From assembly GCF_006345805.1 (NCBI RefSeq), contig NC_042997.1:173538001-173602000 (forward strand): 64,000 nt of DNA, read 5' to 3'. The notes under the pieces are model-generated. The model was not told where the DNA came from, made no database searches, and saw nothing but the letters and a program-made list of their open reading frames with translations. Source of the DNA: Octopus sinensis (Eukaryota). The position numbers were made by a program, and so were the translations under genes. Positions 16,280-55,423 of this stretch are shown in pieces (position 1 is the stretch's first letter; every line of letters begins with the position of its first letter).

Positions 16280-16597
16280 TATAGTCTGTGATAATTGCTT
16301 ATTGTATAGTCGCAAGAGAATGTCCATAACTCTTTTCAGAATCTTTAAGACTGGTGGTGGGGAGGCAGAAGTTATATATTTTCAGTTGATAACCAACGCA
16401 TGATATTTAATCATTTTAACTCTATTTATGGTACTTACAGAAGATTCTCTTCCGTCCAGGTTATTTTTTCTAGTTAAATAAGAATATATATCACCAGCCA
16501 CGGATGCATGTTCCGTAAGCTTTCTTATGTAAGTCAGTACAATAAGTGCTATTCGGTAAAACACAAATCAACTGGTTAAAGACATAGGAGGTTTAAA

Positions 16598-16809
16598 GGC
16601 GGCGAGCTGGCAGAAACGTTAGCACCCCAGGCGAAATATGTAGCCGTATTTCGTCTGCCGTTGCGTTCTGAGTTCAAATTCCGCCGAGGTCGACTTTGCC
16701 TTTCATCCTTTCGGTTTCGATTAAATAAGTACCAGTTAGGCACTTAATCTGTTTGCCTGTCCTTGTTTGTTCTCTCTGTGTTTAGCCCCTTGTGGGTAGT
16801 AAAGAAATA
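16598..16809 (+). mobile_element. SINE B monomer with internal deletion
   Basis: 13-bp TSD GACATAGGAGGTT (16581-16593) / GATATAGGAGGTT (16810-16822). Confidence 0.9.
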
Positions 16810-17103
16810 GATATAGGAGGTTCACTGGTGTTTGGCAATCTGCAACTCAAGGAGTATCCAGAATTAAAGAGGACTTCACCATCGTGTAAAATAACAATAA
16901 AAACAGGTGAATGGATTGTACGGTAAGCTGTTGGGCTGCGCTGTCCAGCCACACGTCGATATTTGCTCTTATGCAACACGGTGCAACCAGAAAGTTTGAG
17001 AGGGTCTCTGCAGTATTTTGTCGTATCGTAAATATGTTGAACTAATGAAATGATTGCAGATGCCGTATTATCAATTCGTTTGTTTCTATTTATAACACAT
17101 ACA

Positions 17104-17141
<38 letters not shown>

Positions 17142-17205
17142 CAGTGGGGAGAGGGAGAGAGATGTAGGTATGTAAATAGATATGTAAATAGGTATGTAAA
17201 TAGAA

Positions 17206-17436
17206 GGCGGCGAGTTGCCAGAATCGTTAGCGCGCCGGACGAAATGCTTAGCAGTATTTCGTCTACCGTTGCGTTCTGAGTTCAAATTCCGCCGAGGTCG
17301 ACTTTGCCTTTCATCCTTTTGGGGTCGATAAATTAAGTACCAGTTACGCACTGTGGTCGATGTAATCGACTTAATACCTATGTCTGTCCTTGTTTGTCCC
17401 CTCTATGTTTAGCCCCTTGTGGGTAATAAAGAAATA
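17206..17436 (+). mobile_element. SINE B monomer
   Basis: 14-bp TSD GGTATGTAAATAGA (17191-17204 / 17437-17450). Confidence 0.92.
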
Positions 17437-18442
17437 GGTATGTAAATAGATAGATAGATAAAGAGTCTGAATATATGACTATATTTCTAATGTCCTTCAG
17501 TTTTAGACAGTGTGTTCATGGAAATTTGGTTGCTACATCTACCAAGTCAAGTGCTTGCGTAAGAGCTTTCCTTCATTGTCTGGAAGTAAACTTTATTGCT
17601 GTTGTTGTGCAGTCGTAACCAAACAAAACTATTGTAAAACGTCTTTGTAATCCCATCATTTATAAAAACGAACGCTATATTTCAATAAGCATACCCTCTA
17701 CTTGACACGAAAGTATATGATTTGTGAGAATTTTGGCTACTACTTTCAGCAGCTTAAACAGTCAACTGTCAAGTTCCCTGTTTAGCAAAATCATGTGTCA
17801 ATGAAAAATGCTTTCTCTCACTTTCCTCCCCCTCCCTATCGCAGCCGTGTAACAGCTTCTATCTCATATCTTCAGTGAAGGTGGCTGAAGTAACAGGGTA
17901 GTGAGTTCGACGTTTGTCTTTCCAACGATATGAATTTCCACTTAGAGAAGGTGATAAAAATTTGTATAAGAGCGATTACGTTATCAGTATTACTACTGGA
18001 TTTGACTAGTTGTTAGCTTCATCAACCTATCCTTATTCATATTCGACTGTTCCCATCCTACCAACTTTCTGGTCTTATATCTAATTTAGAAATAATTATT
18101 CATAATATTATTTACATTCATTTCCTTACCAAAAAAACTTCTGACTCTTGGCGCCAACGTAGAGCTTTCTTAACCTGGGAGAAATAATAGCTACAACTCC
18201 CTTAAACATGTTTTCTGCCGACTTAAAAAAGAAGAAAAAGATGTGTTGGATAATGTGGTTCTATATAGACTGCGTCTCGTAAAATGTGACAGGCACACCT
18301 TTTGACTATGGAGCTTATTTAATCAGAGTTAGCCAAGGCTCAGCAACAAGTTTCTACTCCTTATTGCAAAATGTAACCTTATTTATTCTTTAATCTTAAT
18401 TTTTCAATACAAATTCTATATTTTCACTCTTAATTCTTTATT

Positions 18443-18844
18443 CGGATCTTTTCGGTTTGAACGGCAGTTTTTTCTAGCGGTGTCACCCATAATTATGACC
18501 CTAGTATCGATCTATTACATTTCAATCTGTTTTAGGGTTAGTTAGGGTTAGGGGTGGGGGGAAGGGTATCTGTTTTTCTTCACAAATGTAAATAAACCCA
18601 ATCTGTTTTTTAAACAAGGGACATATTCATATGGCACAGAATGTTTTTTTACCTCACTAGACATCACTGATTGGTTGAAATTGCAGAAATTGAAGAAAAA
18701 GAACAACAAATATCTTACAAACTATAGAATTTTCTCAAGAGAAAAAGATGTTTTATAAACACATTCTACCAGTATACGAAGTTAAAAAAATTTTAGTTAC
18801 CTAGAAATTATGTTAAAAACTGCCGTTCAAACCGAAAAGGTCCC
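18443..18844 (+). mobile_element. MITE with (G)GGATC termini and 6-bp TSD, copy 1
   Basis: ~28-bp TIR; TSD TTTATT (18437-18442 / 18845-18850); internal TTAGGG-like G-rich tract at 18532-18566. Confidence 0.88.
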
Positions 18845-19386
18845 TTTATTCCTATGCAAAGTAGATAAAGCCATGAATAAAAGAACTGGTCAAACCTACC
18901 CTCACACCTTTACCTCCCCTTAACATTATCCCATAAAACACCAGCACTATAAACACACTATAACGATTTTATGTTTATTGCAGCGCTGAAAAATAATCAC
19001 CTGTCTGACCTGAATTCATTGGGAAAGTTTTACACGCCAACTGGATTGAATTAGTGAGTTTTGGAGACCATTTCCGGTTTATATATAAACTCCTCCTGTA
19101 ACTCTTTTTGTTGTTTGTTGTTTTTGTTCGTGTTTTCTTTTCTTCTTTGTTAAAACATTTATGTCACCAGCTCTAATAGCTTTTCCCCATTTGTAAGAAA
19201 CGTTCTACTCAAGTTTATTATTATTTTTTCCACTCTATGAAGTATTGTTTGCAATTTAACGCGAACTTTCCTTTCTGTGTCCGTTTTCTGCTCTTGTGAA
19301 TACATCAATTTAGAAAAAAAACTTCCTGGTTCAAGTTAAACCTGGGTATAAACACTTACAGTCTTAAAAAGTGGCAAGCTGGCTAA

Positions 19387-19800
19387 GGCGGCGAGCTGGT
19401 AGAAACGTTAGCACGCCGGGCGAAATGCGTAGCCGTATTTCTTCTGCGTTACGTTCTGAGTTCAAATTCCGCCGAGGTCGACTTTGCCTTTCATCCTTTC
19501 GGGGTCGATTAAATAAGTACCAGTTACACACTGAGGTCGATGTAATCGACTTAATCCGTTTGTCTGTCCTTGTTTGTCCTCTCTGTGTTTAACCCATTGT
19601 GGGTTGTAAAGAAATAGGTATTTCGTCTGCCGCTACGTTCTGAGTTCAAATTCCGCCGAGGTCGACTTTGCCTTTCATCCTTTCGGGGTCGATAAATTAA
19701 GGACCAGTTACGCACTGGGGTCAATATAATCGACTTAGTCCGTTTGTTTGTCCTTGTTTGTCTCCTCTGTGGGTAGCCTCTTGTGGGCAGTAAAGAAATA
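19387..19800 (+). mobile_element. SINE B head plus two bodies (dimer)
   Basis: Junction AAGAAATA|GGTATTTCG at 19616/19617; 15-bp flanking repeat CACTTACAGTCTTAA (19353-19367 / 19801-19815). Confidence 0.9.
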
Positions 19801-20289
19801 CACTTACAGTCTTAACCGTTTGCATACCCTGTGTATCATGTAACACACTGGATATATTTCCCTGGAGTCTGAGCATCATATATGATATACATTCCTAATT
19901 TGTTTTCAACTGCCAGAGTAGGATTTCTGAAAAGAAAGCTTTATAGTACTCGAGACGTATGAAACAAGGACTAATTTAGAGTCTGAAAACAAGCCTTATG
20001 GACATTTAGGACAAATTTACGAAGGGGTTAAATAAGACACCTGACAACAACAAGAGAGCAAACTTATCAGAAGATCATGTGGTTGATGCGGTTTGTAACA
20101 TTTCGCTTAGCAGCCCTCAATCTGGAACTAGAGAACTCTAAACATACATACATACATACATACATACATACATACACACATACACACATACACACATACA
20201 TACATACATACATACACACATACTACATACATACATACATACATACATACATACATACTTACACACACACATGCACGCACACACTATAT

Positions 20290-20622: not shown

Positions 20623-21834
20623 AACTACAAATAATGAAAGCAATTATATATATATATATTTACATTACCTACTTTATATTTATATATACATATTTATATA
20701 CATGTAATATTTGTATATATGCCTTTCATATATTTAGCCAGTACACATACACATGATTGGCATTTCGTATTTTTGTTTATTTGCTTGGAAGAGTGACAGA
20801 AGCAAAATCTACACAAGAAAACAGAAAAAAGAACAAAAGGAAAAACAAAAAGAACTGCAAGAAAAAATAATTGTACAATAGCAACAAAATGAATAATAGA
20901 AAAGAAACACAATTTATTTGTGTTGTTCATATTTTATTTAGGTTTTTAGTGTTTTCTTTGCGTAGATTTTTTTTCTTCTTCTCTCTTCAAAATAGATAGA
21001 ATTTTATCATAGAATTATTAGCTGTTAGATCTCTTCCGGGTAGGAGTTTTGTATTTCAGTATTTTGTTTGGTGTAGGCGGCGAGGTGACAGAAGTATTTT
21101 GCCTGTCTTTATGTTCTGATTTCAAATTCCGTCGGGATCGATATAATTGACTTACCCCTCAAACGAAATTGATGGCCTTTTGTCAAAGCTTGAATCCAAT
21201 ATTTCGCTTAAGCGTAGCGATATGTGTGTTTGTGTGTGTTTGTGTGTGTGTTTGTGTGTGTGTGTTTGTGTGTGTGTATGTTTGTTACAATTAATCTGCT
21301 TGTTCTTCCGTTACCTAGCCCGTCCGTAACGCTTTCACGGGATTAGTTGAAGGGGTGAGGAAGTGGAAGGTGGGAATGAAGAGAAGGAGTGTGAAGGGTG
21401 GAGTAGTATTGAGGGAGATGGAGTGGAGAGAGTGGGAAGCAGAGTGGAGAGGAGGGAAGGGCGAGGTGGTGGTGAGTGAAATGTGTAATTTATTTTTTGA
21501 ACTAAGTTTTTTCCTCCGTTACTTAGCCCATCTATAACGCTTTTACTTGTGATTAGATGAAGGGAAAGGCGAAAAGCGATAGAAAAAACGAGGGTAAGGC
21601 GAAGAGTGAAAGAGAAAGTGGGAGAGTGCTGTATATTAAGTCTATAAAATTGTGCATAACATGTATAAAGTGTATATATAAAGTACGTTAAGTAATCATC
21701 GTACTCCAATTTCTTTCACTTTTGAATGAGTAGCTGATGAGCGACTATTTTTGATACAGACATAAAGCAGGCTACGCTTTCAGGTTTACAATTAATTCTG
21801 TGAAATATTCACGGGTCTTGCTAGTATATATAAA

Positions 21835-22055
21835 GGCGGCGAGCTGACAGAGACGTTAGCACGCCGGGCGAAATGCGTAGCCGTATTTTGTCTGCCGCTA
21901 CGTTGTGAGTTCAAATTCCGCCGAGGTCGACTTTTCCTTTCATCCTTTCGGGGTCGATTAAATAAGCACCAGTTACGCACTGGGGTCGATATAATCGACT
22001 TAATCCGTTTGTTTGTCCTCTCTGTGTTTAGCCCCTTGTGGGTAGTAAAGAAATA
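21835..22055 (+). mobile_element. SINE B monomer
   Basis: Consensus match; TSD unclear. Confidence 0.88.
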
Positions 22056-22680: not shown

Positions 22681-23000
22681 GGCAATCCGTCGATCACGAC
22701 GATGATGGTTCCAGCAGATCCGATCAACAGAACAGCCTGTTCGTGAAATTAACGTACAAGTGGCTGAGCACTCCACAATCACACGTGTACCCTTAATGTA
22801 GTTGTCGGGGATATTCAGCGTGTCACAGAGTGTGGACAAGGCTGGCCCTTTGAAATACTACTAATTTTTGCAAGTTTGGTGGACTAGAGCAACGTGAAAT
22901 AAAGTGTCTTGCTCAAGGACACAACGCGTCGCCAGGAATTGAACTCACGACCTTACGATTGTGAGTCGAATTCCCTAACCACTAAGCCACGCGCCTTCAC
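22681..23000 (-). mobile_element. Chimeric SINE: family E head plus family A tail
   Basis: 22860-23000 matches the head of 3404-3744; 22681-22860 matches the tail of 7197-7580. Confidence 0.8.
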
Positions 23001-23033
23001 ATATACAATTACAACCTGGTATTTAGTAAAGAG

Positions 23034-23263
23034 GGCGGCGAGCTGGCAGAAACGTTAGCACGCCGGGCGAAATGCTTAGCGGTATTTCGTCTGCGTTACG
23101 TTGTGAGTTCAAATTCCGCCGAGGTCGTCTTTGCCTTTCATCCTTTCGGGGTCGATAAATTAAGTACCAGTTACGCACTGGGGTCGATGTAATCGACTTA
23201 ATACCTATGTCTGTCCTTGTTTGTCCCCTCTGTGTTTAGCCCCTTGTGGGTAATAAAGAAATA
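23034..23263 (+). mobile_element. SINE B monomer
   Basis: 13-bp TSD GGTATTTAGTAAA (23018-23030 / 23264-23276). Confidence 0.92.
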
Positions 23264-24031
23264 GGTATTTAGTAAATATAATTTTACTCTCACTGTGAAT
23301 ATGGATCCCATGATAATATCCAAGAAGCTTAGGACAACAAGTTGAAAAGAGCGAATAGAATAGTTTCCACTACCGTTAAAAGTTAAACTGACATTCTTTT
23401 ATTTCCTCTCGATTGTTGAAAATTATATGATTATATTGAAACATGCGGGCACATGGAGGTTAATATTCTTGAATTGGTAAACCTGGAAAAGTACAGGAAA
23501 GCATATTTATGCTTAAAATATTGCAGCTATAGTTAAAATTTAAAAATATATTTAGATTTAAAAACTAAAAATAATAGCTTTAATTAGCTACTCTATAATA
23601 ATAAAATTAACTCAAATAATAAATTTAAGGCTAACTGTCAGCAAAAAATATAAAAAATTTCAATAGCCCCATTTATAGGGCTATTGAAAATTTTCAATTA
23701 CAAGTGTTTAGAACTACTAAAAGTTCGTCAGTAGTATTCAATTGAAATTCCATTTTTACTAATCTTTTTTATAGAAATTGGCACACTATAATTCATTGAT
23801 AAAGACACCACAAGGCTGGTCTTCTGGAAATTTCAAAGAAGGAAAGTTCAATTGAAACCTTTATGGTAGGGTTGAAGTTTAGGGGAGAGTACTGTGATAT
23901 TTTCCGGAGAAGGCGGTACTCTTACTAATCATATTTTTTGAGGGGTTGCAGTTGAAAGGTCCGCATTCTGGATGCTAGCAATGCATACAACCGTTGAAAC
24001 ACACTCTATTGGCTATAAAATGTATGAATAT

Positions 24032-24920: not shown

Positions 24921-25131
24921 GCATACATACACACGTACATCGTTTTATTGTTTTTATTTAACTGTCTAAATCTAGTTTGTGTAACTCAAAAAAACGTCGC
25001 AAAATATAATGCAGTGATAGTGTAATGTTAAGAGGCATTGTGGCTTCGTCAGATGTCTATACTATAAGGGCGTGGCGAAGTGAGAGAATCGCTAACGCGT
25101 CAGATATAATGCATTGCGGTATTTAATAACT

Positions 25132-25546
25132 GGCGGCGAGCTAGCAGAATCGTTAGCACGTCGGGCGAAATGCTTAGCGGTATTTCGGCTGCCGTTACGT
25201 TGTGAGTTCAAATTCCGCCGAGGTCGACTTTGCCTTTCATCCTTTCGGGGTCGATAAATTAAGTACCAGTTAAGCACTGGGGTCGATATAATCGACTTAA
25301 TACCTATGTCTGTCCTTGTTTGTTCCCTCTGTGTTTAGCCCCTTGTGGGTAATAAAGAAATAGGTATTTCGGCTGCCGTTACGTTGTGAGTTCAAATTCC
25401 GCCGAGGTCGACTTTGCCTTTCATCCTTTCGGGGTCGATAAATTAAGTACCAGTTATGCACTGGGGTCGATGTAATCGACTTAATACCTATGTCTGTCCT
25501 TGTTTGTCTCCTCTGTGTTTAGCCCCTTGTGGGTAATAAAGAAATA
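25132..25546 (+). mobile_element. SINE B dimer nested in an older B2 SINE (25069-25717)
   Basis: Internal junction at 25362/25363; TSD GGTATTTAATAAC (25118-25130) / AGTATTTAATAAC (25547-25559); the flanks join into a degenerate B2 element. Confidence 0.88.
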
Positions 25547-26227
25547 AGTATTTAATAACGGTTCATTACGTTCTGAGTTCAAATCCCATCGTGGTCAATT
25601 TTGTATTTCATCTTTCCTGAATCGTTAAAATAAAGTCCCTGTCAAAATGGGGAAGGCAGTATAATCGACTATTCACCATCCTCAAATTTCAGGACAAGTG
25701 TTTCATGTTAGAAATCAACGGTGCGTGATTAACAGAATTTTAAGAATGTCGAATAAAATATCTCGAGCTATCTAGGGACGGATCTTTATATTCTGAGTTC
25801 AAGTCATGCCGAGTTTGTCTGTGATTTTTATTCTTATAGATTTGATAAAAAGAGAACTTGATTACAGTCAAGTACTTGGGTCGGTATAATCAATTATGCT
25901 CCTCCCCCGAATATGAAGTATTTAGGCACTGTATTTCTAATCAATATTATGAAAGTGCATTGGATTATTAGTAATACGAAAGGAATTTACCATCTATTTC
26001 TAGTAGTTCTGTTGACTATGTAGAAGCTCTGTCACGGCAGGATCAGTAGAGCTGGTAAGCTTAACGAATTGTTTCGTCTCTCTTTCGATTAAATTCAATT
26101 CCAGTATACCTGTAAATAGGTATATCAACAGATTGCTATTTCAGCCTTATTATATGAGTTGATGCCTATCGCTGTATATTACTGGTATTTCATCACAACT
26201 ACTAGTGATATTCTGAGCAGTTTTAAG

Positions 26228-27743: not shown

Positions 27744-28271
27744 CTGTTGTTGTTGTTGTTGTTCTTCTTCTTCTTCTTTTTCTTCTCTTCTTCTTCTTCT
27801 TCTTCCTTCTTCTTCTTCTTCTTCTCTCTTCTTCTTCTTTTCTTCTTCTTCTTCTTCTTCTTCTCTTCTTCTTCTTCTTCTTCTTCTTCTTCTTCTTCTC
27901 TTCTTCTTCTTCTTCTTTTTCTTCTTCTTCTTCTTCTTCTTCTTCTTCTTCTTCATATTATTATTATTATTATTATTATCATTAAGGCAGTGAGCTGGCA
28001 GAATCGTTAGCACGCCGGGCGAAGTGCTTAGCAGCATTTCGTCCGTCTTTAAGTTCTGAGTTCAAATTCCGCTGAGGTCCGCTTTGCTTTTCATCCTTTC
28101 GAGGTTGATAAATGAGTGCTTGTTGAGCACTGGGGTTGATAAAATTGATTTACGCCCTCCCGCAAAATTTTGGGTTTTATGTTTAAAGTAGAAAAGATTA
28201 TTATTATTATTACTGTTGTTGTTGTTGCTGTTGTTGTGTTGTTGTTGTTGTTGTTGTTGTTGTTGCTGTTG

Positions 28272-31416: not shown

Positions 31417-31718
31417 TATAATACGCATACATATAAACGAGTATGCTTAGAAACGAAAGAAAATGAACTCAATTCATGATGTAGAGTAAAGGCAACAAAC
31501 TGTCATAATCTTTTTACGCCAGGCAAAATGCTTGGCGGCATTTCACCCGGTTTTACGTTCCTAGTACATAAATTCCGCCGATGTTGACTTCGTTCTTCAT
31601 CCTTTCGGGGTTGATAAAAATAATTACTAGTTGAGGACTAGGGTCGATGTAGTCGCATTACCTCCTCCCTCGAAATTAATGGCCGCGTACAAAAATTTGA
31701 AACCAATATATGATATAG

Positions 31719-32126
31719 TCCACAACGTGTGGACAATGTTGAAGGCAGACGAGAAAAGAGTGAGCGCTTTTGAAATGTGGTGTTACTGCAGAATCCTTAG
31801 AGTGTCGTGGACGGAGAGAAGGACGAACAACTGGGTACTAGAAAAGCTCGGTTGCGAGATGACTCTTCGGCGAAACATCGTGAAGCGGAAGCTAAATTTC
31901 TTTGGCCACGCCATGCGCCGAGATGGACTTGAGCGAACGATCATAACTGGTAAGGTGAACGGCAGACGTAAAAGAGGCAGACTACCCACTTCTTGGCTGA
32001 GAGACATCGCAGCCACAAGATTGTCTTTATTCTCAGCTGTCCATGGGGTAGAGGACAGGAGAAGGTGGCAAGAAACTGTGATGACCACAGCATCACATAG
32101 TGCGACACCTGACTAGGATGATGATG
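31719..32126 (+). mobile_element. 5'-truncated RTE-clade LINE (ORF C-terminus) with (GAT)n tail
   Basis: AFEMWCYCRILRVSWTE...KRKLNFFGHAMRR...GRRKRGR is the RTE C-terminal signature; 11-bp TSD ATATGATATAG (31708-31718 / 32127-32137); inserted at the tail of a B2 SINE (31515-31705). Confidence 0.9.
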
Positions 32127-34108
32127 ATATGATATAGAGTTGATATTAGAAATCAGTTTAGGATTCTAACTGTTACCATTCAGATTTTACACATTCGTCT
32201 AGACGTATGCGTGGGCTCGTCCAGACAGTATTTGGTGAATGGAAGTAACATAGCATCAGTGGCAAACTAGTTTAGCTAATACTCATTGATCAAGGTGTAA
32301 GAAGTGATCCAGTATATAGAAGCCAAGAAATATCCTTATTGCTTGACAGTTATTGTGTAAAAAAAAGAACTCGATTCCGACCTAGAATCACCTGGAGGAA
32401 GGTGCTTCACGATGTACAGAATCGTTTGGGTGTGTGGTGAATCGCCACTCCGTAGATTTCTGAAATTATGGAAGCTTTTCAGGGAGAATTTTTGTTCTCT
32501 GATGATGATGATAAGGTAACACACCTCTGATATACGTTTGTGATATCACTGGATGTTTTAATATGTGCGACTTTTTAGTTGTGCATAGCTAGATTTTGGG
32601 AACTCAGTTTGTTGCAAAGTATCAAAGCCGATAATGGTTCTCTTTTAAAATCTGCGATCTTTGAATTTTCAGTCGAATTGGAACAAGATCGAGGAGGTAG
32701 TCCTGTCAGTACTTCTTCAAAATATTATAAATATGCTGTATGTCCTTACTTTGGAAAGGCAAAAAACCCTTTGATTAGGCAGAAAGAGAAATTTCTATAG
32801 CTTATAGTAGGCTCTTGGAATGCCAACTTACTTATAACTGATGTTGACCGAGCATGAATAGATGTCCTTAATGTTACTGGACTCAAATGGATTGTTTTAT
32901 TTGTGTTATAGGTGGGAAATATCTTAGCAGAGACACCACATCCCTAGCAATACTAGTAGCATCATTTAGGATTAATAGCGGAGAACACCAAGTTACCTTC
33001 ATGTTTCTCACACACACTAACACTCAGAAATAAAAGAATATATTTTTGAGGTATAAATTATTACTGATTTACTCATATTAATAGGTTCTTACGTTGCACA
33101 CCAATCTTGGAATCTGTATGATTACTCTCGCCAAGCTCCTCGAACAAAACTCATATAGAAACTGAGAGTTGAGTATTATATGATACGTATACATGGGTTA
33201 CATATGTATCAAACACACAAAAAATCACGCACGTGCACACAAACAATTTGCAAAATCTGTGTCTATACATGCAGAAACTGCGTACGTTTGTAAAATGGTT
33301 ATAATATAGTGTCGTACATTAACTGGTGTATGTATTCGTTTACATACTTGTCGGTGTATCTTTCTATCTTAATTCCAGTTATACATCTATACATGTATAC
33401 CGTTATGTTATGATATAATATCATAATATATTGTGTTGCTAATATCATTGTATTATCTCTGTGTGGAGGTATGCTTCATATCGTACTTAGCATGTATTAA
33501 TCTCAAAACGAGCAACAATTCTTTTTCTCTTCTACTAAAGCAGCACTCGTCTTCCGTATGTAGACAGATTCAGTAACTTGTTAAAATGTCGGATCTGTGG
33601 GTGCGTGTATAGGATTTACAAGCTATCCTTGATTATCAACCTGTCATGTGTTTTTTTTCAAGGCAGTTAGCAAAGTAGAAGCGCTAGTTTCTTTTCATTG
33701 CTTGTGTACATGTGCTTCACAAATACCTCAAGTGTATTATGGCTACATCTTACCTATAAATAAACGTATTGCTTCTACACATATGCATACAAATATACAA
33801 CACAAGTATACGTGAACAAAGAGACTTACACATATCCATACGTTGTTACGTAGACTAACATCTATGGCCTCCCTCACCGCCACCACTATCTCCAATGCGA
33901 ACACAACGCCAATATATAATGTACAAAGAGCAAAGAGAAAACGTAAATGATAAGTTCATGGGAAAGACTACATACGTATAAATAATATCGACAGCAAAGT
34001 CATTTAATAACAAAGAGTGCATGTCATTTCCTTGAAAGAACGACACTTCTTAATTATACTGATATTGCATTCAGCACACTACTTCATATTCATAACCTTG
34101 CGGAATAA

Positions 34109-34470
34109 GGCGGCGAGCTGACAGAATCGTTAGCACGCCGGGCGAAACGCTTAGTGGTATTTCGTCTGCCGCACTGGGGTCGATATAATCGACTTAATCC
34201 GTTTGTCTGTCCTTGTTTGTCCTCTCTGTGTTTAGCCCCTTGTGGGTAGTAAAGAAATAGGTATTTCGTCTGCCGCTACGTTCTGAGTTCAAATTCCGCC
34301 GAGGTTGACTTTGCCTTTCATCCTTTCGGCGTCGATTAAATAAATACCAGTTACGCACTGTCCTTGTTTGTCCTTGTTTGTCCTTGTTTGTCCCCTCTGA
34401 GTTTAGACCCTTGTGGGTAGTAAAGAAATAGGTATTTCACCCGATTTTACTTTCTAAGTTCAAATTCCGC
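34109..34470 (+). mobile_element. SINE B array (head plus three body starts)
   Basis: AAGAAATA|GGTATTTC junctions at 34259/34260 and 34430/34431; internal deletions. Confidence 0.85.
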
Positions 34471-34809
34471 CGGATCTTTCCTGTTTGGTTACCAGTGGCT
34501 CCAAAAATTAAAGATTACTGAAAATTTTATAATTTGGCACAATAATACACTTTCCCAAACGGAACTGCTGGAGATATTTCATTTTTTTTTTTTGTTTCCA
34601 GAAAAATGTTTTTAAAAAGTTATAGAGGTTTAAAGTTTGTCGGATCTTTCCTGTTTGGTTACCAGTGGCTCAAAAACTTAAAGTTTACTGAAAATTTTAT
34701 AATTTGGCACAATAACACACTTTCCCAAACTGAACTGCTGGAGATATTTCATTTTTTTTTTTGTTTCCAGAAAAATGTTTTTAAAAAGTTATAGAGGTTT
34801 AAAGTTTGT
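34471..34809. repeat. Tandem duplication, 170/169-bp unit
   Basis: Units start CGGATCTTTCC at 34471 and 34641 and are near identical. Confidence 0.92.
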
Positions 34810-39186: not shown

Positions 39187-39298
39187 CACCGGTACTTAAT
39201 TTATCGACACCGAAAGGATGAAAGACAAAGTCGACCCCGGCGTAGTTTGAACTCAAACGTAAAGATGGATGAAATACCTATTTCTTTATTGCCCCAAC
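39187..39298 (-). mobile_element. SINE B tail fused to a B body
   Basis: Same AAGAAATA|GGTATTTC junction at 39279/39278. Confidence 0.75.
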
Positions 39299-39496
39299 AA
39301 CAACACTGGTCTGCATCATTTTCTTTATTGGCTGTATTGTGTCTTTTTCGAAATATATATGAAAAATAGTGATTCTTGGTTGTTTTGTAATCATCTCTAT
39401 CACATGAGGTTCTCAAGTTATGCAGACACGTTATATCTCTTCTTCTATGACATAAGTACATGATAAAGTATATTACCAATGAAATATAAGATATTG

Positions 39497-44374: not shown

Positions 44375-46727
44375 CACTGGTCAACAAGTATTTTTCCTCA
44401 AGTATATGTCAAGGTGTACTGAATGTAGTTTTCAATGCTGATTTCACATGTACAATTAGGTTTTTGACATCACGTACAGAATTCAAGATGCAAACTTTTT
44501 TTTTGTTTTAGCTCATGCAATATATAGAATTTGCAGTTGATGCTCATGCATAATAAAGAGCATCCAATTGCATGTATTTCATTTACACCATGGAAACGTA
44601 CCTTTAAAATAAACTACATTATTCCTTGCGGCATAGTTCAGATGCAATATTTCATCATCTTGAATCAACCAATCAAGTTTTGTCTGATGAAATGGTTATT
44701 CAACATCTCAAATTGTTCATTCGTGATTGGTCTGATGAAATATTTTTTCATCCCAAATTCAAAATAAGTATAACCGTTTGTATCTATTTCCTTACTTGTT
44801 TTACAGTGTTAGCAAAGTCAAGACAGTGTAGAAATCGTTTTGTTATGCCTGTGGACAATTTATTGTGAAAGCTCAAAAACGTACAATAACACTAGAGATC
44901 AAGAAGATTTATAAGCTATACTTTGACTGTCCTCTTGGAGATCAGGACAAGTTATGGACACCACATTTTATCTGCTTAGCTTGCTCAAATGGCTTACGTA
45001 ACTGGTTCATTAAGAAGAAGAAGTCTATGCCTTTTACCATTCCAATGATATGGAGGGAGCCGAAAGACAATTTTAATGACTGTTATTTTTGCAAAATAAA
45101 TGTCACAGGATTTTCTATGAAGAATAAACACAAAATTGTGTAACCCAATTTGGATTCTGCAATGAGATTTGTGCCTCACAATAGAAGTCTGCCAATTCCA
45201 GTTCCACCAGATGATGGCATTGAAACATCAGATGATGATGCTGACTGTTACGATAGTGCTGCTGAGGAAGATTACGTGGCTCATGATGATAGATTTGAAC
45301 CTCAGAAATTTTCCCAAGCTGAACTGAATGACCTTGTCAGAGACCTATCCCTCTCAAAAGATAAAGCGGAACTGTTGGGATCAAGACTGAAGGAGAAGTA
45401 TCTGCTAGAGAAGGTACTTGTATAACTTATTTTCGGCAGAGAAATGTGGTTCTACAAACGTGTTTTTCGGTTGAAGGCTCGCTTTGCTTTTGCAGTAACA
45501 CCGATGAACTTTTCGAATGTTTATCACAAAACCTGATTCTACAGAGTGGCATTTGTTTATTGACTCTTCAAAACGAAGTTTAAAATTTGTACTTCCCACA
45601 ATGTTAATTTGAAGTCCTCCATTCCTATTACACACTCCGTCATCTTCATGAATCATATGAGAATATGGAACTTTTACGTCATGCCATTGCCTATGAAAGA
45701 TACTCATAGAAAATATGCGGAGATTTAAAGGTCATTGGAATGTTAATGGGAATGCAAAATACTGTTGTTTCTCATGTCTGAGATAATCGGGCAACTGACA
45801 GGCATCATTCGGAATCAAACTGGCAGACAAGAACATCATACCTCCAGAACTATCTAGCGCCAAGAATACACCTCTTATAGATCTATGTAATGTCCTATGC
45901 CTCCTTTGCACATAAGGCTTAGACTGATGGAACAGTTTGTAAAGGCACTAGGGGAGAGAAGTGCCAGAGGATTTGAGTATATTGTTGACAAGTTTCCCAA
46001 AATCACACAGGCGAAGTTGAAAGAGGGCATCTTTGTCGGACCCCAAATTAGAGAACTACTCAAAGATGTCACCTTCAAGACAATATTGGACGAACTAGAA
46101 CTGCCTGCCTGGACTACTTTCAATTGGATCTATAAGAATTTCTTGGGCAACAAGAAAGCAATGGACTACAAGGATGGCATCAAGAATCTTCTGAAATGTA
46201 ACTCAGCAATGAGTTGTCGTATGTCACTGAAAGTTCACTTCTTGGACTCCCATCTGGATTTCTTCGCAGATAACATTGGAGCAGTGTCTGATGACATTGA
46301 TGCTATGGAGAAACGGTACCAAGCCTTCTAGAATGATAGTATTCTGGCTGACTACTGCTGGACACTTTACCGTGATCAACCAGATCAGGAACACCACAGG
46401 AAATCCAAATCACGATGTTTCTAACTCTGTTGTTCTAACTTTGTTTTGTCTGACCCATTTTTTGTGTATTCACTCTATGTAGAATTATGTAGAATGAGTG
46501 ATGATTTTTAGCTCAATAAACTCATTTACTTTCTAAAAATAATATGGTTTTATTTATTACGTTAATGATTTCAGATGTACAACTATGTAAATATTTGCAT
46601 CTACTGAAAAACTGATACGTGCTGCATACAAATGGAGTGAAACTTTGAAATCATCATGAAAAATTAGTCTAAAAACGTTGGTTTGCATTCTTAATGAGTA
46701 TAATACATTTAGCTTTGTTGACCAGTG
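44375..46727 (+). mobile_element. Chapaev3-type (CMC) DNA transposon, 2353 bp, complete ends
   Basis: 13-bp perfect TIR CACTGGTCAACAA / TTGTTGACCAGTG; 3-bp TWA-type flanks TTA/ATA; internal transposase. Confidence 0.8.
44838..46424 (+). pseudogene. Decayed Chapaev3-type transposase
   Basis: FCYACGQ...YFDCPLGDQDK...PMIWREPKD..DCYFC; FIDSSKRSLK; CGDLKVIGMLMG; PPLHIRL; LKEGIFVGPQIRELL; HFLDSHLDFF..N.GAVSD; ADYCW. Stops, frameshifts and deletions present. Confidence 0.8.
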
Positions 46728-47854: not shown

Positions 47855-48336
47855 GAAGAAATTGTGAAATGTTTTCAAGTATTTGAGGAGGAAGTGTGAA
47901 CGATTCTATAGATAGATACTTTGTAGTTTTATTGTTCAGCACTTTGTGTTTAAACTTCGCTGAAATTTTATTTTGCTATTTCCGTTAGTTGTGTTTGATA
48001 ATTAATTTATAAACAGTTATATCCAGCTTTCACATTACTCCAATAAAATATAATGAGGTTCATAGATTTAAAGTCATCCCATTATCACATGTGGATGGTC
48101 GGTGCTGAATTTAAGAGCTTCGAATTGGTGCAATCAGATATTGCTAAAAATTAGTGTCAGAGTAAGGTAGATATTGACTAAAATTTCTTATAAGGGTTTT
48201 CGTAGCATTATCAAGGGCTGAACAACGGTAGTCAAGCGTTGGTAGGCGAAAACACAGACATAAGTAAAGACATGTTCATACATATATACATGGATACATT
48301 CATGCAAGCCACGCATACAGATATGTATATACAGAA

Positions 48337-48751
48337 GGCGGCGAGCTGGCAGAAACGTTAGCACACCGGGCGAAATGAGCAGCCGTATTTCGTCAGCTGA
48401 TACGTTCTGAGTTCAAATTCCGCCGAGGTCGACTTTGCCTTTCATCTTTTCGGAGTCGATAAATTAAGTACCAGTTACGCACTGGAGTCGATATAATCGA
48501 CTTAATCTGTTTGTCTGTCCTTGTTTGTCCCCTCTGTCTGTAGCCCCTTGTGGGTAGTAAAGAAATAGATATTTCATCTGCTGATACGTTCTGAGTTCAA
48601 ATTCCGCCGAGGTCGACTTTGCCTTTCATCTTTTCGGAGTCGATTAAATAAGTACCAGTTACGCACTGGAGTCGATATAATCAACTTAGTCTCTTTGTCT
48701 GTCCTTGTTTGTCCCCTCTATGTTTAGCCCCTTGTGGGCAATAAAGAATTA
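48337..48751 (+). mobile_element. SINE B dimer
   Basis: Junction AAGAAATA|GATATTTC at 48567/48568; TSD ATATGTATATACA (48321-48333 / 48754-48766). Confidence 0.9.
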
Positions 48752-49245
48752 ATATATGTATATACATGTGTTTGTGTACAACGGGTGTCCTTCAGTTTCT
48801 CTTTACCAAATACACTCACAAGCCTCTTGTCGACCAAGGGCTATAACAGAAGATCCTCGACCAAGTTGCAGAGGAACTGAACCCAAGACCAAATGTTTGG
48901 GAAGCAAGCTTCTCAACGACGCGACCGCATTTTCGCCGATGCGTAATTATAAGGAAAAGTTGGTTTCTTTCCTAGTAGATTGAGCTACTAGGTACGGATC
49001 TTTCTCCTAAGGGAGGATACTTTAAGTTTGCTCTCGCATCGTGGCTGCCATTTTAAATTTTGATTTACTTTCCATCATGGCGTCACAAAGCAACGTGAAC
49101 GGACAATATTCTGATTTATTTCACTCGTTTCTTGTATGGAGCCATCTTTTCATTTCGTTTCCAGTGTTTCGTTTCTTCGTAACTCACAGAACATGAATAA
49201 ATGTATATACACACATTGGCATACACGCACCCACGCACGAACACA

Positions 49246-51716: not shown

Positions 51717-51780
51717 TTTTTGTACGTATGTGTGTATCTGTATATATATATATATATATATGCATGTATGTATTTGTTTG

Positions 51781-51866
<86 letters not shown>

Positions 51867-52039
51867 AGTCTGTCTGTCTTTCTGTCTGTTTATCTATCAT
51901 CTATCTATCACACTAACTATGCATCTATTTAACTACAAACATACTCTCCTTCTCTTGATAAATATACATAACATACACTCACATCCATCCATCTATCCAC
52001 CCATCCATCCATCCATCCATCCATCCATCCATCCATACA

Positions 52040-52070
<31 letters not shown>

Positions 52071-52339
52071 CAAGCTCAAATCCACGTTTGTACTAATTCG
52101 GCTGATTTACAGGCAAAAATCTACCTGCAGCAGTTTTCCACCACATACATATTGTTGAACCTCGATCCGTGCTGGAAATTATTCATGGCTCGGAAAAGTT
52201 GGTAATCTGATGGTACAAGGTTTGAACTATAGCCAGGGTGAGGTTGCACATTCTGTTCTTCAAGTTTGCGCATGATCACATTGATCACATTCAAGTTTGC
52301 TCTTGATCACATTGGCTGAGCTTATGGAGGTATCGATTG

Positions 52340-52765
52340 ATTTAAAAAGCCAAGTTCTGGCGACAAAGAACGACTGTTTGTCCTTGGTTGCTCTTCAGCC
52401 ATTTCAAGCTAGGCTTCATATTCCACAGTAGGTCTCCCTGACATTAGTTTGCCTTTGAAGCTAGTGTCACTTTCCTTGAAATGTCTGAGCCAATTTTGTG
52501 ACATACGTTCGTTGACTGTTTCTGGGCCTTCCTTATAATTAATTTCTTTTGCCGTTGCTCTTGCACTAAGTCCTTCTTTCAAAAAGATTGTGTAAAATGG
52601 CTCTGATTTCAATCTTTTCACCACTCAATGTCAATGCTGCAAAATAAAGAATAAACAATTCAGCAACGATTGGACAAGTTATTTCAAATTAATGATACAA
52701 CATGAAGAGATGTCAAAAATCATTACTGAAAACTTGAAAAAACTTTTGACTCAACCTGGTGAATA
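52340..52765 (-). pseudogene. Mariner transposase N-terminal HTH remnant
   Basis: FLKEGLSARATAKEIN..EGPETVNERMSQNWLRHFKESDTSF....SGRP resembles the Mos1-type HTH; a probable TIR remnant lies near 52740-52765. Confidence 0.7.
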
Positions 52766-52775
52766 TATGTGTGTG

Positions 52776-52809
<34 letters not shown>

Positions 52810-52871
52810 ATACACACACAAACACACACACACATAGAAATATGTACGTAAGTATATATGTATTTACATAC

Positions 52872-53278
52872 CTTTTACTATTTTACTTGTTTCAGCCATT
52901 TGACTCTGGCCATGCTGGAGCATCGCCTTTAGTCGAGCAAATCGACCCAGGACTTATTCTGTGTAAGCCTAGTACTTATTCTATCGGTATATTTTGCCGA
53001 ACCGCTAAGTTACAGGGACGTAATCACACTACTATCGGTTGTCAAACGATGTTGAGGGGACAACACAGACACACAAACATATACACACATATATATATAT
53101 ATATACATATATACGACGGGCTTCTTTCAGTTTCCGTTTACCAAATCCACTCACAAGGCTTTGGTCGGCCCGAGTCTATAGTAGAAGACACTCGCCCAAG
53201 GTGCCACGCAGTGGGACTGAACCCGGAACCATGTGGTTCATAAGCAAGCTACTTACCACACAGCCACTCCTACGCGTA
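52872..53278 (-). mobile_element. Composite SINE C-D, full length
   Basis: Consensus match to other copies. Confidence 0.9.
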
Positions 53279-53974
53279 TGCATATATTTTTTTTAGAAAG
53301 GAGTTAATTTCTATCAAATGAAGACAATTGTGATGACAACAATGATAAGTATTAGATGTAGAAATTTCTGAAAATCTTGCATAATTTCATAGTTCCACTT
53401 ACAGATTGTATTTGTAGAGTATATGTTAGCTGGTCGCTTCTTTGCCTGAAAATTCTACTTATTCTAGATTGTCGTTTAGACATTTATTAATATAATTATT
53501 CTCTGACTAATGACCAGAAATATATAGCCAGATATTACAATAATGTAAAAGATTGATGAAAAATATAACATCTATACCAAACTGAGGAGAATTTGGAGCC
53601 AATCCGTTCGAAACTTACCTTTGAATTTTTAACCAATAATTATTGGAATAGTTGGATATGTGATTAATCGTGTCAGTAGTAATCTTGGGCAACTAAGTTA
53701 CAAACAGTCAGATAAAACATAATTGATTAGGAATTTACAGCTACAAGCCATGAAAAGGAATGTCGAAACATGTAAGATATCCTAGCTTGGTATACACTTT
53801 AAAACCATATATGCCACGATATCCATGTCTGTAGCCATATCCGTGTGTGCACAAACATATGTACATGCCTGCATACTTACAGGCAGGCATGTATACATGT
53901 TTATGTATGCATACATGTGTGCATACATACTTATGCGCACATATATGTACTCTGTTGATGGTATAAATATAGAG

Positions 53975-54205
53975 GGTGGCGAGCTGGCAGAATCGTTAGC
54001 ACGCCGGGCGAAATGCTTAGCGGTATTTCGTCTGCCGCTACGTTCTGAGTTCAAATTCCGCCGAGGTCGACTTTGCCTTTCATTCTTTCGGAGTCGATTA
54101 AATAAGTACCAGTTACGCACTGGGGTCGATATAAACGACTTAATCCGTTTGTCTGTGCTTGTTTGTCCTCTCTGTGTTTAGCCCCTTGTGTGTAGTAAAG
54201 AAATA
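53975..54205 (+). mobile_element. SINE B monomer
   Basis: 15-bp TSD GGTATAAATATAGAG (53960-53974 / 54206-54220). Confidence 0.92.
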
Positions 54206-54433
54206 GGTATAAATATAGAGAATCCTCCTGTTATTTTAATACATACATAGGCATCAGCAAGAGAAACAGTGGGGAAAATTCCCATCAAAATTTCTACAAA
54301 GTACAAACATAACAAGGCTTGATATAATTGTTCAGGATGAACAAGAAAACGTATGATCCCTCTTAGAGGTCAGCTGAATTCCTGATGTGAATATCTTAAA
54401 AATCAACGAGAAAGAGGATAAATATAGACAATC

Positions 54434-54594
54434 GTCCTACTATAAAGTCTGTCCTTGACTATCTAACCGTTGTGTCTCACTTTGACTGTCCTACTATAGT
54501 GCCTGACCTTTACTATCTAACCATAGTGTCTCACTTTGATTGTCCTACTATAGTGCCTGACCGTGACTATCCCACTGGTGTCTCTCCTTGAATT
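54434..54594. repeat. 54-bp minisatellite, three units
   Basis: GTCCTACTATA unit starts at 54434, 54488 and 54542. Confidence 0.9.
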
Positions 54595-55027
54595 GGACAA
54601 CTGCTTCGAAATCTACTTCTGCACTGCGTTTGAAAATTCACATTTATACTAATAATAATTGCTGAACTTTATTTTGTTCGTTCAGGCTACTGGTTTCAAA
54701 GGCTATAGTTTTCAAAGGCTAAAGGTTTTAGACAGAGTCCAATAAGCTAACACGCACATTATAAATACAATCTGTAAGGGAGAAATAAAACGAAGTTTTT
54801 CTCAAGTTCAAAGTGTAAAATTGTTTTTGCTACCTACATTCCAATGATGGAACTAGAAATCAGCTCCTTCCTTAGAAGAAGACTTCAAATAATTTCAAAT
54901 AGAAATGAACATACATACAGACAAACATGCGTGGATACTTATAGACATACATATACATACATGCATATTGAGGTTTTGGATTGTACTACTTAGAAACTTA
55001 GGGAAACAATAGTTTAATTATCATATC

Positions 55028-55423
55028 GATTTCAAATGTTGGCACGAGGCCAGCAAATGTCGAGTAGGGGATAAGTCGATAACACAAGACCCAGTAGTTA
55101 ACTGGTATTTATTTTATCGACCCAAAATGAAGAATGCTAAAGTCAATCTCGGCGGAATTCGAACTCAGAACATGCAGACGGACGAAATACCTATTCCTTT
55201 ATTACCCACAAGGGGCTAAACATAGAGGGAACAAACAAGGACAGACAAAGGGATTAAGTCGATTACATCGACCCCAGTGCGTAACTGGTACTTAATTTAT
55301 CGACCCCGAAAGGATGAAAGGCAAAGTCGACCTCGGCGGAATTTGAACTCAGAACGTACAGACGGACGAAATACCGCTAAGTATTTTCGCCAGGCGTGGG
55401 AACGACTCTTCCAGCTCGCTACC
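55028..55423 (-). mobile_element. Hybrid: young B body inside an older B2 SINE
   Basis: Diverged head, young B body, AAGGAATA|GGTATTTCG junction (55192/55191), then the B2 body and tail. Confidence 0.8.

What the first reader, a model, noticed from the sequence alone, without database searches (positions are those of the whole stretch)
16581..55423. SINE B targets a GGTAT/GATAT motif that it carries itself: a self-targeting retroposon
Seen in sequence: of eight B copies with readable TSDs, six have a TSD starting GGTAT or GAYAT on the pre-insertion (left) side: 17191 GGTAT, 23018 GGTATTT, 25118 GGTATTT, 53960 GGTAT, 16581 GACAT, 48320 GATAT. The copies at 1526 and 19387 do not fit, although 19387 has GGTAT 8 nt upstream of its TSD. 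The same GGTATTTCG occurs ~47 nt into the SINE, between its A and B boxes. Inference: either the partner LINE endonuclease prefers this site, or the SINE RNA 3' end extends into GGUAU(UU) and primes reverse transcription by microhomology. Either way the family makes its own landing pads. I do not know of this being described for this family.
Basis: partly seen in the sequence, partly recalled or inferred. Interest (0 to 1): 0.8.

Follow-up and report, generated by a model that had tools for sequence, protein, structure and literature searches.

The report
SINE that inserts into its own GGTAT motif
A short retroposon in this animal genome lands preferentially just before the five bases GGTAT, which it also carries at position 48, so new copies repeatedly insert into old copies and build head-to-tail partial dimers. 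This is a real, non-A-rich parallel to the self-insertion hot spot known in human Alu.

Summary
All six listed coordinates check out.

- **3' ends.** The window holds 18 3' ends of SINE B, and every one stops at ...AAAGAAATA. Ten are followed by a target that begins GGTAT, and two by GATAT.
- **Target origin.** At four sites the GGTAT is also present in the left copy of a 13-15 bp target-site duplication (TSD), so it comes from the target. Three of these lie outside SINEs (3 of 10 non-SINE targets, p = 7e-8).
- **Self-insertion.** Eight of the 18 ends abut position 48 of a resident SINE, always in sense orientation. Three of these are unambiguous nested insertions with 13 or 17 bp TSDs. They explain the [1-231][48-231] partial dimers.
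- **Allele control.** Resident heads with GGTAT at position 48 are occupied 7 of 11 times. Heads with AGTAT, CGTAT, GGCAT, GCCAT or AGCAT are occupied 0 of 15 times (p = 5e-4).
- **Context.** GGTAT outside SINEs is occupied only 3 of 83 times, so the motif is needed but SINE context adds about 18-fold.

Whether the LINE endonuclease or annealing of read-through RNA sets the preference cannot be decided from one window. No further genomic copies could be retrieved. This is a new variant of a known kind: Alu has a comparable self-insertion hot spot.

The parts
53975..54205 (+). SINE B monomer, full length, internal GGTAT at 54022. TSD GGTATAAATATAGAG at 53960-53974 and 54206-54220.
   Evidence: (15/15, p=0.001)
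23034..23263 (+). SINE B monomer, internal GGTAT at 23081. TSD GGTATTTAGTAAA at 23018-23030 and 23264-23276, with 3 extra nt (GAG) before the head.
   Evidence: the target is not SINE-like
17206..17436 (+). SINE B monomer, position 48 = AGTAT. TSD GGTATGTAAATAGA at 17191-17204 and 17437-17450. The target lies in a (GTAAATAGRTAT)n minisatellite.
16598..16809 (+). SINE B monomer, older (84% identity), with an internal deletion. TSD GACATAGGAGGTT at 16581-16593 and GATATAGGAGGTT at 16810-16822.
1526..1756 (+). SINE B monomer that does not fit the motif. TSD GAAGTAGCTTAG at 1496-1507 and GAAGTAGTTTAG at 1757-1768.
5249..5477 (-). SINE B monomer, internal GGTAT at 5430 (unoccupied). TSD weak (TTATTAG).
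   Evidence: p=0.34
21835..22055 (+). SINE B monomer, position 48 = CGTAT. TSD weak (TATATAAA against TATATGAA).
   Evidence: p=0.07
12143..12203 (+). 5'-truncated SINE B (last ~60 nt) inserted in an (AT)n microsatellite. The 3' flank starts ATATT.
19387..19616 (+). Full-length B (younger unit) whose 3' end abuts position 48 of the resident unit 19617-19800. It is preceded by a 19-nt remnant at 19368-19386, of which 19371-19386 (GTGGCAAGCTGGCTAA) resembles head positions 1-16 of the resident copy.
   Evidence: (units only 89% alike, TSD region 12/17)
19617..19800 (+). Resident B, positions 48-231. Its own TSD, CACTTACAGTCTTAA at 19353-19367 and 19801-19815, flanks the whole composite.
25132..25362 (+). 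First unit of a partial dimer. Positions 48-64 (25179-25195, GGTATTTCGGCTGCCGT) are identical to 25363-25379, including the private CGGCTG.
25363..25546 (+). Second unit (48-231) of the dimer. The whole dimer is flanked by the 13-bp TSD GGTATTTAATAAC (25118-25130) and AGTATTTAATAAC (25547-25559).
25066..25700 (+). Older related SINE split at its own position-48 GGTAT by the B dimer. Head at 25066-25130, remainder at 25560-25700.
   Evidence: read directly from the sequence
34109..34430 (+). Resident B carrying a clean nested insertion. A 5'-truncated B (consensus 142-231) at 34173-34259 is flanked by the 17-bp TSD GGTATTTCGTCTGCCGC at 34156-34172 and 34260-34276.
34431..34480 (+). Fragment of an older SINE starting exactly at position 48 (GGTATTTCACCCG...), abutted by the B tail that ends at 34430. 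No resident head lies upstream.
39279..39300 (-). 22-nt stub of a B tail (TTGTTGGGGCAATAAAGAAATA) abutting position 48 of an older SINE (39278-~39180, minus strand).
48337..48567 (+). First unit of a partial dimer, position 48 = CGTAT.
48568..48751 (+). Second unit (48-231), starting GATATTTCA. The dimer is flanked by the TSD AGATATGTATATACA (48319-48333) and ATATATGTATATACA (48752-48766).
55192..55358 (-). Young B body (consensus 65-231, 96% to consensus) inserted into an old Y-family SINE.
55028..55423 (-). Old Y-family SINE hit at its position-48 GGTAT. Head at 55423-55376 (79% to B). The 17-bp TSD GGTATTTCGTCCGTCTG is at 55375-55359 and 55191-55175. The Y body and tail run 55174-55028.
54184..54205 (+). 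Example of the B tail CCTTGTGTGTAGTAAAGAAATA. It holds a 4-bp hairpin (loop CUUGU) that is conserved with compensatory changes in the Y and X tails.

Best explanation
SINE B is about 231 nt long. It has A- and B-box-like motifs in its head and a non-poly(A) tail that contains a hairpin and always ends ...AAAGAAATA. I take it to be copied into the genome by target-primed reverse transcription, using a partner LINE that is not in the window.

**Shown**
- The first nick falls immediately 5' of 5'-GGTAT-3' on the element's sense strand, so the primer end is ...ATACC-3'.
- The second nick falls 13-17 nt downstream, giving TSDs that begin GGTAT.
- The preference is graded, with G-R-T-A-T the best fit.
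- The SINE head, and those of related families, carry GGTAT(TTCG) at positions 48-52. Resident copies that keep this allele are therefore hit in sense orientation.

**Inferred**
- The partner's endonuclease is the main source of the preference.
- When resident and incoming copies are similar, the 5' end of the new copy is resolved in register by homology. The product looks like a seamless full unit followed by a 48-231 unit, a partial dimer.
- When they are dissimilar, or the new copy is 5'-truncated, the classical nested structure with a 13 or 17 bp TSD is seen.
- Each insertion separates the resident copy's A box from its B box, while the composite keeps one intact promoter.
For: - **Precise 3' ends.** All 18 B 3' ends stop at AAAGAAATA. 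In 8 of 10 outer TSDs the right copy starts at offset 0 (p <= 0.001).
- **Motif in the target.** GGTAT starts both TSD copies at 17191/17437, 23018/23264 and 53960/54206. At 25118/25547 it starts the left copy and the right copy reads AGTAT. Three of 10 non-SINE targets start GGTAT, p = 7e-8.
- **Self-insertion.** Eight B tails abut position 48 of a SINE head, all in sense orientation.
- **Clean nested cases.**
  - 34173-34259 is a 5'-truncated B with a 17-bp TSD.
  - In 55423-55028, the head is 79% identical to B and the inserted body 96%. The rest is Y family at 67%, and the 17/17 TSD carries the Y-diagnostic GTCCGTCTG.
  - The 25132 dimer sits inside an older SINE with a 13-bp TSD at that SINE's own position 48.
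- **Allele control.** GGTAT alleles are occupied 7 of 11 times and other alleles 0 of 15 (Fisher p = 5e-4).
- **Family specificity.** Only B tails are found at position 48. None of about 10 Y or X tails is.
- **Tail hairpin.** It is kept by compensatory changes across B, Y and X. That fits a LINE reverse transcriptase that recognises the tail.
- **Element boundary.** No copy at a non-GGTAT target carries GGTAT after AAATA, so the motif is target-derived.
Against: - The sample is one 64-kb window: 18 events, of which 8 share a single target type.
- The partner LINE and its endonuclease are unknown.
- GGTAT outside SINEs is occupied only 3 of 83 times, and GGTATTT outside SINEs 1 of 12. A five-base endonuclease motif alone does not explain the 18-fold bias towards SINE-internal sites.
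- Three position-48 junctions (19617, 34431, 39278) lack the resident head upstream. They need an accompanying target deletion, or another mechanism.
- In dimer 48337 the units share private variants beyond the expected TSD. A simple nested insertion does not predict this.
- The B consensus has no T4 run. Pol III transcripts must therefore read into the flank, which keeps the annealing model open.
Confidence: 0.6

Rival explanations
1. RNA-annealing (microhomology or homing) model. B has no internal Pol III terminator, so its transcripts run into the 3' flank. Source copies that sit at GGTAT sites, especially those nested in another SINE, make RNA reading ...AAAUA-GGUAU(UUCGUCUGCC...). This flank part would anneal to the nicked target strand and place the reverse transcriptase at the last A of the tail. 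Targets that begin GGTAT, and above all SINE position-48 sites, would then be favoured. The preference would be inherited through the flank of the source copy rather than encoded by the endonuclease.
For: - There is no T4 run in the B consensus.
- Every copy starts precisely at AAATA although the RNA must be longer.
- Occupancy is about 18-fold higher at SINE-internal GGTAT than at other GGTAT (7/11 against 3/83). Long homology would explain this.
- Y-family tails align with B column by column, but Y TSDs begin AATAT or GATAT instead of GGTAT.
- It is a known principle that the first TSD base tracks the 3' terminal repeat in RTE-clade LINE/SINE pairs (PMC13295347).
- From my own knowledge, R2 uses downstream 28S sequence in the same way.
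Against: - Six to eight insertions at targets with little or no match to GGTAT (GAAGT, CACTT, ATATT, TTTAT) still start at exactly the same A, so annealing is not required.
- No copy carries transduced GGTAT at a non-matching target.
- The most conserved TSD positions are 3-5 (TAT), not positions 1-2, which pair with the primer's 3' end.
- No RNA data are available.
Confidence: 0.3
2. The partial dimers are not nested insertions. They would be made in one event by template switching of the reverse transcriptase, from position 48 of one SINE RNA to the 3' end of another. Alternatively they descend from a dimeric master copy whose read-through RNA retrotransposes as a unit.
For: - In dimers 19387, 25132 and 48337 a good TSD flanks the whole composite.
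- Junctions 19617, 34431 and 39278 have no resident head upstream.
- The 48337 units share private variants along their length.
- A nested copy without a terminator would naturally give dimer RNA.
Against: - The outer TSD is equally expected for a resident copy hit later.
- 34173-34259 (5'-truncated, 17-bp TSD) and 55423-55028 (old Y head and tail around a young B body, 17/17 TSD) cannot be made this way.
- 19368-19386 looks like the resident copy's head remnant.
- Each dimer has its own variants in positions 48-64, so there is no single dimer master.
- A switch always at position 48 would itself need the GGUAU homology.
Confidence: 0.2
3. GGTAT is simply the last five bases of the element, an invariant flank, and the apparent target preference is an artefact of where the boundary was drawn.
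For: - Nine of 18 tails are followed by GGTAT.
- The tails of the related Y family align so that AATAT occupies the same columns.
Against: - The left TSD copy, 13-15 nt upstream of the head, also begins GGTAT at 17191, 23018, 25118 and 53960.
- Copies at other targets end AAATA and are followed directly by their TSD (1757, 16810, 19801, 48752).
- Y copies show GATAT or AAT.. on both sides too.
Confidence: 0.03
4. Some perfect dimers arose by microhomology-mediated tandem duplication (replication slippage). The slippage would be between the internal GGTATTT at position 48 and the GGTATTT that starts the 3' TSD of a monomer already sitting at a GGTAT target.
For: - Dimer 25132 has GGTATTT both at position 48 and at the start of its outer TSD.
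- Its two units are 97.6% identical.
Against: - It cannot explain 19387 (outer TSD CACTT), 34173, 55423, 34431 or 39278.
- A 5-8 bp microhomology across 184 bp is a rare route compared with 8 junctions in 64 kb.
Confidence: 0.07

Closest known systems
Alu self-insertion hot spot (position 133, after the A-rich linker; Levy, Schwartz and Ast 2010, PMC2836564)
   Same: A SINE inserts into resident copies of its own family. It does so at one prominent position, in sense orientation, because that position resembles the partner LINE's integration site.
   Different: - The Alu site is A/T-rich (L1 TT/AAAA type) and lies between the two monomers.
- Here the motif is GGTAT, between the A and B boxes of a non-poly(A) SINE.
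- Occupancy is allele-specific.
- The products are in-register partial dimers.
RTE-clade LINE/SINE insertion signature 'Tn-TA' (Bov-B and Sauria SINE, plant Au SINE; PMC13295347, PMC6007223)
   Same: - Non-poly(A) SINEs show a reproducible sequence signature at the first nick.
- The first TSD base correlates with the element's 3' terminal sequence.
- TSDs are of similar length.
   Different: - No T-run about 10 nt upstream and no TA at the nick was seen by eye in the B target flanks.
- The B signature is a five-base motif inside the TSD.
- B has no terminal microsatellite.
Site-specific non-LTR elements that use flanking-sequence annealing (R2 in 28S rDNA; own knowledge, not tested here)
   Same: Transcripts carry downstream target sequence that can pair with the nicked target and fix the start of reverse transcription. 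This is a possible model for the SINE-context bonus.
   Different: - R2 uses a restriction-like endonuclease and is essentially confined to one site.
- B uses many sites (8 of 18 are not GGTAT or GATAT) and makes 13-17 bp TSDs, which is typical of AP-type endonuclease LINEs.
Stringent-type SINE/LINE pairs with a tail stem-loop (for example UnaL2/UnaSINE1; own knowledge)
   Same: The tail is non-poly(A) and holds a conserved hairpin close to the 3' end. Here the hairpin is supported by compensatory changes between families B, Y and X.
   Different: - Those pairs end in short tandem repeats and show little target preference.
- B ends in a unique sequence and shows a strong preference.

Membership tests
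LINE-mobilised SINE (target-primed reverse transcription) | Copies flanked by target-site duplications that vary in sequence and have lengths typical of staggered nicks | tested here: met
   Eight of 10 outer TSDs are significant, at 12-15 nt scored length (19 nt for 1526 when read by eye). Nested TSDs are 13 and 17 nt.
LINE-mobilised SINE (target-primed reverse transcription) | 5'-truncated copies with intact 3' ends | tested here: met
   12143-12203, 34173-34259 and the 39279-39300 stub all end ...AAATA or a close variant.
LINE-mobilised SINE (target-primed reverse transcription) | 3' tail shared with a partner LINE | not testable with these tools
   Every tail match in the window is preceded by SINE body. 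The only LINE 3' end present (31719-32128) has a different, (GAT)n tail. The source genome could not be reached.
tRNA-derived SINE | Head recognisable as a tRNA, with internal A and B boxes | tested here: inconclusive
   A-box-like TGGCAGAATCG and B-box-like GAGTTCAAATTCC are read from the consensus. ARAGORN finds no tRNA in the window. Rfam finds no tRNA match at E <= 10 on copy 53975.
Strictly site-specific non-LTR retrotransposon systems (R1, R2, Tx1, Dong type) | Essentially all copies lie in one defined target sequence | tested here: not met
   Only 10 of 18 insertions are at GGTAT. Others are at GAAGT, CACTT, TATAT, TTTAT, ATATT and similar.
RTE-type 'Tn-TA' insertion signature | T-run about 10 nt upstream of the nick, and T|A at the nick | tested here: not met
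   The upstream flanks of the TSDs at 17191, 23018, 53960, 25118, 16581 and 48319 were read directly and show no such pattern. The sample is small.
Self-insertion hot spot of the Alu type | One dominant position within the family's own consensus, hit in sense orientation | tested here: met
   Eight of 8 SINE-internal insertions are at consensus position 47|48, all in sense orientation.
Self-insertion hot spot of the Alu type | Hot spot explained by an A-rich L1-type endonuclease site | tested here: not met
   The site is GC|GGTATTTCG and is allele-specific for GGTAT.

The most novel reading that the evidence does not exclude
The SINE carries a heritable target memory. It has no terminator, so each source copy transcribes the start of its own target site. 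Copies nested at position 48 of another SINE would make RNA whose 3' extension matches every other SINE head. That RNA would guide integration to the same position, a homing-like and RNA-guided bias on top of the endonuclease. This would explain the roughly 18-fold excess at SINE-internal GGTAT. New copies would then systematically split the promoters of older ones, which is competition within the family.
Probability: 0.2. Interest if true: 0.75.

Novelty: new variant of a known kind. Interest (0 to 1): 0.5.

Why it matters
- **A defined target motif.** A five-base, non-A-rich motif with a built-in allele control (GGTAT against AGTAT, CGTAT or GGCAT in otherwise identical heads) is a natural experiment on how a LINE/SINE pair chooses its nick site. 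It gives a direct handle for finding and testing the partner endonuclease.
- **Family dynamics.** Self-insertion between the A and B boxes means new copies disable old ones and create composite dimers. This affects family dynamics, age estimates from nesting, repeat annotation, and assembly of a SINE-rich genome.
- **RNA guidance.** If the SINE-context bonus proves to be RNA-guided, it would extend R2-style flank annealing to a dispersed Pol III retroposon.

Tried and rejected
**Getting more genomic copies**
- Two exact-pattern scans of metagenome contigs found nothing, and a viral-contig scan found nothing.
- The genome-contig scan gave one 22-mer hit in Natrialba. It is a chance match inside coding sequence, not a tRNA or SINE.
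- A protein search with the antisense reading frame of B found one 543-nt ENA scaffold, L002. It holds a diverged copy with GGTGT at position 48 and no readable TSD.
- A protein search with the transposase-like ORF at 45897-46331 found no relative above 65% identity. The source genome is therefore not in that collection.

**Partner LINE**
- No tail match in the window lies outside a SINE.
- The RTE-like fragment at 31719-32128 has a different tail.
- Pfam gave nothing useful for three TE-like ORFs.

**tRNA origin**
- ARAGORN and Rfam were both negative.

**Literature**
- I found no description of this SINE or of a GGTAT target. One of these searches was wasted on 'Octopus sinensis' matches.
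- My guess that the genome is a cephalopod (octopus-like) rests on memory only and was not verified.

**Ideas rejected**
- GGTAT as part of the element.
- 23018 lying in an old SINE: there is no similarity.
- A single dimer master: each dimer has its own variants.

Full report
**The element.**
- The window is AT-rich (33-42% GC) and full of microsatellites and short retroposons.
- BLAST with three seed copies, followed by alignment of 11 full-length copies, defines SINE B at about 231 nt.
- The head begins GGCGGCGAGCTGGCAGAA and holds an A-box-like motif. GGTATTTCG lies at consensus positions 48-56. A B-box-like GAGTTCAAATTCC lies at about 72-84.
- The tail reads ...GTTTAGCCCCTTGTGGGTARTAAAGAAATA and has no poly(A).
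- ARAGORN and Rfam do not recognise a tRNA in it, so a tRNA origin is not shown.
- The consensus has no run of four T. If Pol III transcribes it, as the boxes suggest, the RNA must extend into the 3' flank.

**Checking the observation.**
- An anchored test takes the 25 nt after the tail and compares them with the 40 nt before the head, against 2000 random flanks. It gives p <= 0.001 for eight of ten outer TSDs. In every case the right-hand copy begins immediately after AAAGAAATA.
- Three TSDs begin GGTAT on both sides: 17191/17437, 23018/23264 and 53960/54206. A fourth, 25118/25547, has GGTAT on the left and AGTAT on the right.
- The motif therefore belongs to the target and not to the element. 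Copies at other targets (1757, 16810, 19801, 48752) run straight from AAATA into their TSD without any GGTAT.
- GGTAT occurs at 8.4e-4 per position in the window. Three of ten non-SINE targets starting with it gives p = 7e-8.
The partner of 25118 lies after a whole dimer, and the 48320 TSD begins one base earlier, so GATAT is offset there.

- The window holds 18 B 3' ends.
- Eight of them abut position 48 of a resident SINE head, always in the same orientation: 19617, 25363, 25547, 34260, 34431, 48568, 55191(-) and 39278(-).
- This accounts for the five head-to-tail composites [1-231][48-231] that BLAST showed.
- Three cases are unambiguous nested insertions.
  - A 5'-truncated B (consensus 142-231) at 34173-34259 is flanked by the 17-bp repeat GGTATTTCGTCTGCCGC.
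  - At 55423-55028(-), the first 47 nt are only 79% identical to B, while the body at 65-231 is 96% identical. The downstream unit is a Y-family element at 67%. The two 17-mers are identical and carry the Y-diagnostic GTCCGTCTG. A young B therefore entered an old Y copy, and its 5' end was joined in register.
  - The 25132 dimer lies inside an older relative. That relative's head (25066-25130) and remainder (25560-25700) are separated by the dimer and a 13-bp TSD at the relative's own GGTAT.
- In 19387 a 16-nt piece resembling head positions 1-16 precedes the full-length newcomer. This suggests insertion with a 31-nt target deletion.

**An internal control.**
- I listed every SINE head in the window by its position-48 allele.
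- GGTAT alleles are occupied 7 of 11 times and GATAT 1 of 2. AGTAT, CGTAT, GGCAT, GCCAT and AGCAT are occupied 0 of 15 times (Fisher p = 5e-4).
- One base therefore decides whether a head is hit, which argues against a general attraction to SINEs.
- Conversely, GGTAT outside SINE-family sequence is occupied only 3 of 83 times (Fisher p = 3e-6 against 7 of 11). GGTATTT outside SINEs is occupied 1 of 12 times.
- The motif is necessary but not sufficient. Either recognition extends further, or homology between the SINE RNA and the target helps.

**Related families.**
- Two other families, here called Y and X, share the head and body to about position 168 but have other tails.
- The three tails align without gaps.
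- They share a 4-bp hairpin with loop CUUGU whose stem differs by compensatory changes at three of four pairs. Cells are 91.7% paired, and 0 of 500 shuffles reach the observed score.
- These are only three lineages, so the number of independent changes is small. Still, the result fits a tail that a LINE reverse transcriptase recognises.
- Y copies also have TSDs beginning AATAT or GATAT (31471/31705 at 14 of 17 matches; 55 region).
- None of the Y or X tails sits at position 48. The GG part of the preference is therefore specific to B.

**Mechanism.**
- I consider it shown that B integrates with a first nick immediately 5' of GGTAT, and a second nick 13-17 nt downstream. It is also shown that the copy of this motif in SINE heads is a heavily used landing site.
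- I infer that the partner LINE's endonuclease supplies most of the preference. I also infer that in-register dimers arise because the newcomer's 5' end is resolved by homology with the resident head. A later deletion between the two adjacent heads would give the same product.
  - For it: the lack of a terminator, the precise start inside a longer RNA, and the 18-fold SINE-context bonus.
  - Against it: the identical start point at unrelated targets, and the stronger conservation of TSD positions 3-5 than of positions 1-2.
- Template switching or dimer masters may account for some composites (19617, 34431, 39278, 48337). They cannot account for the three clean cases.

**Comparison with what is known.**
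- Nested-insertion hot spots are established in human repeats, including a single sense-orientation hot spot for Alu into Alu at position 133 (PMC2836564).
- RTE-clade LINE/SINE pairs have a reproducible signature at the nick, and the first TSD base follows the 3' terminal repeat (PMC13295347, PMC6007223).
- B does not show that Tn-TA signature. It is not strictly site-specific, and its motif is not A-rich.
- I found no paper describing this SINE or a GGTAT target, but Repbase and Dfam could not be consulted.
- I rate it a new variant of a known kind.

**Limits.**
- Everything rests on one 64-kb window.
- No further copies from the source genome could be obtained.
- The organism was not identified by any tool.

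Noticed in passing
window 54160-54205 and the tails at 4577-4598, 31680-31704, 40727-40706(-), 28170-28195: The tails of three SINE families (B, Y, X) align gap-free. They share a 4-bp hairpin with loop CUUGU, and three of its four pairs differ by compensatory changes. It is probably the stem-loop recognised by the partner LINE.
   Followed up: partly
window 31719-32128 (+): A 5'-truncated 3' end of an RTE-like LINE. The ORF ends at 32116, the tail is (GAT)n, and the TSD ATGATATAG lies at 31710-31718 and 32129-32137. It is inserted inside the right-hand TSD copy of Y-family SINE 31491-31704. It is not the partner of SINE B.
   Followed up: partly
window 21075-21195 (+): A Y-family SINE with head positions 1-17 fused directly to position 48 (..GTGACAGA|AGTATTTTG). 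The breakpoint is the same as the B landing site. Compare the 16-nt head remnant at 19371-19386.
   Followed up: no
window 22950-23000 (-); also L002 440-543: A different SINE with tRNA-like head motifs (GGCGCGTGGCTTAGTGGTTAGGGAATTCGACTC...). It lies next to the B copy at 23034 and is also present on the single related metagenome scaffold.
   Followed up: no
window 17160-17204 (+): A minisatellite of three GTAAATAGRTAT units, which is the target of copy 17206. Each unit contains AAATA|GGTAT, the same sequence as the junction between the B tail and its target.
   Followed up: no
5' flanks of SINE heads throughout, e.g. 4379-4382, 16594-16597, 27982-27985, 34105-34108: Heads of all three families are almost always preceded by (T/A)AA. 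One to 19 extra nucleotides lie between the left TSD copy and the head. These may be a 5' leader, or a preference of the second nick.
   Followed up: no
window 45897-46331 (+) and 38414-38746 (+): Two TE-derived ORFs. One is a transposase-like C-terminal fragment whose best database relatives are only 58-65% identical. By eye, the other looks like the cysteine-rich C-terminus of a LINE ORF2. Pfam gave nothing significant for either.
   Followed up: partly
window 34350-34390 (+): The resident B copy at 34260-34430 has lost about consensus 150-185. In its place it carries a triplicated TCCTTGTTTG.
   Followed up: no
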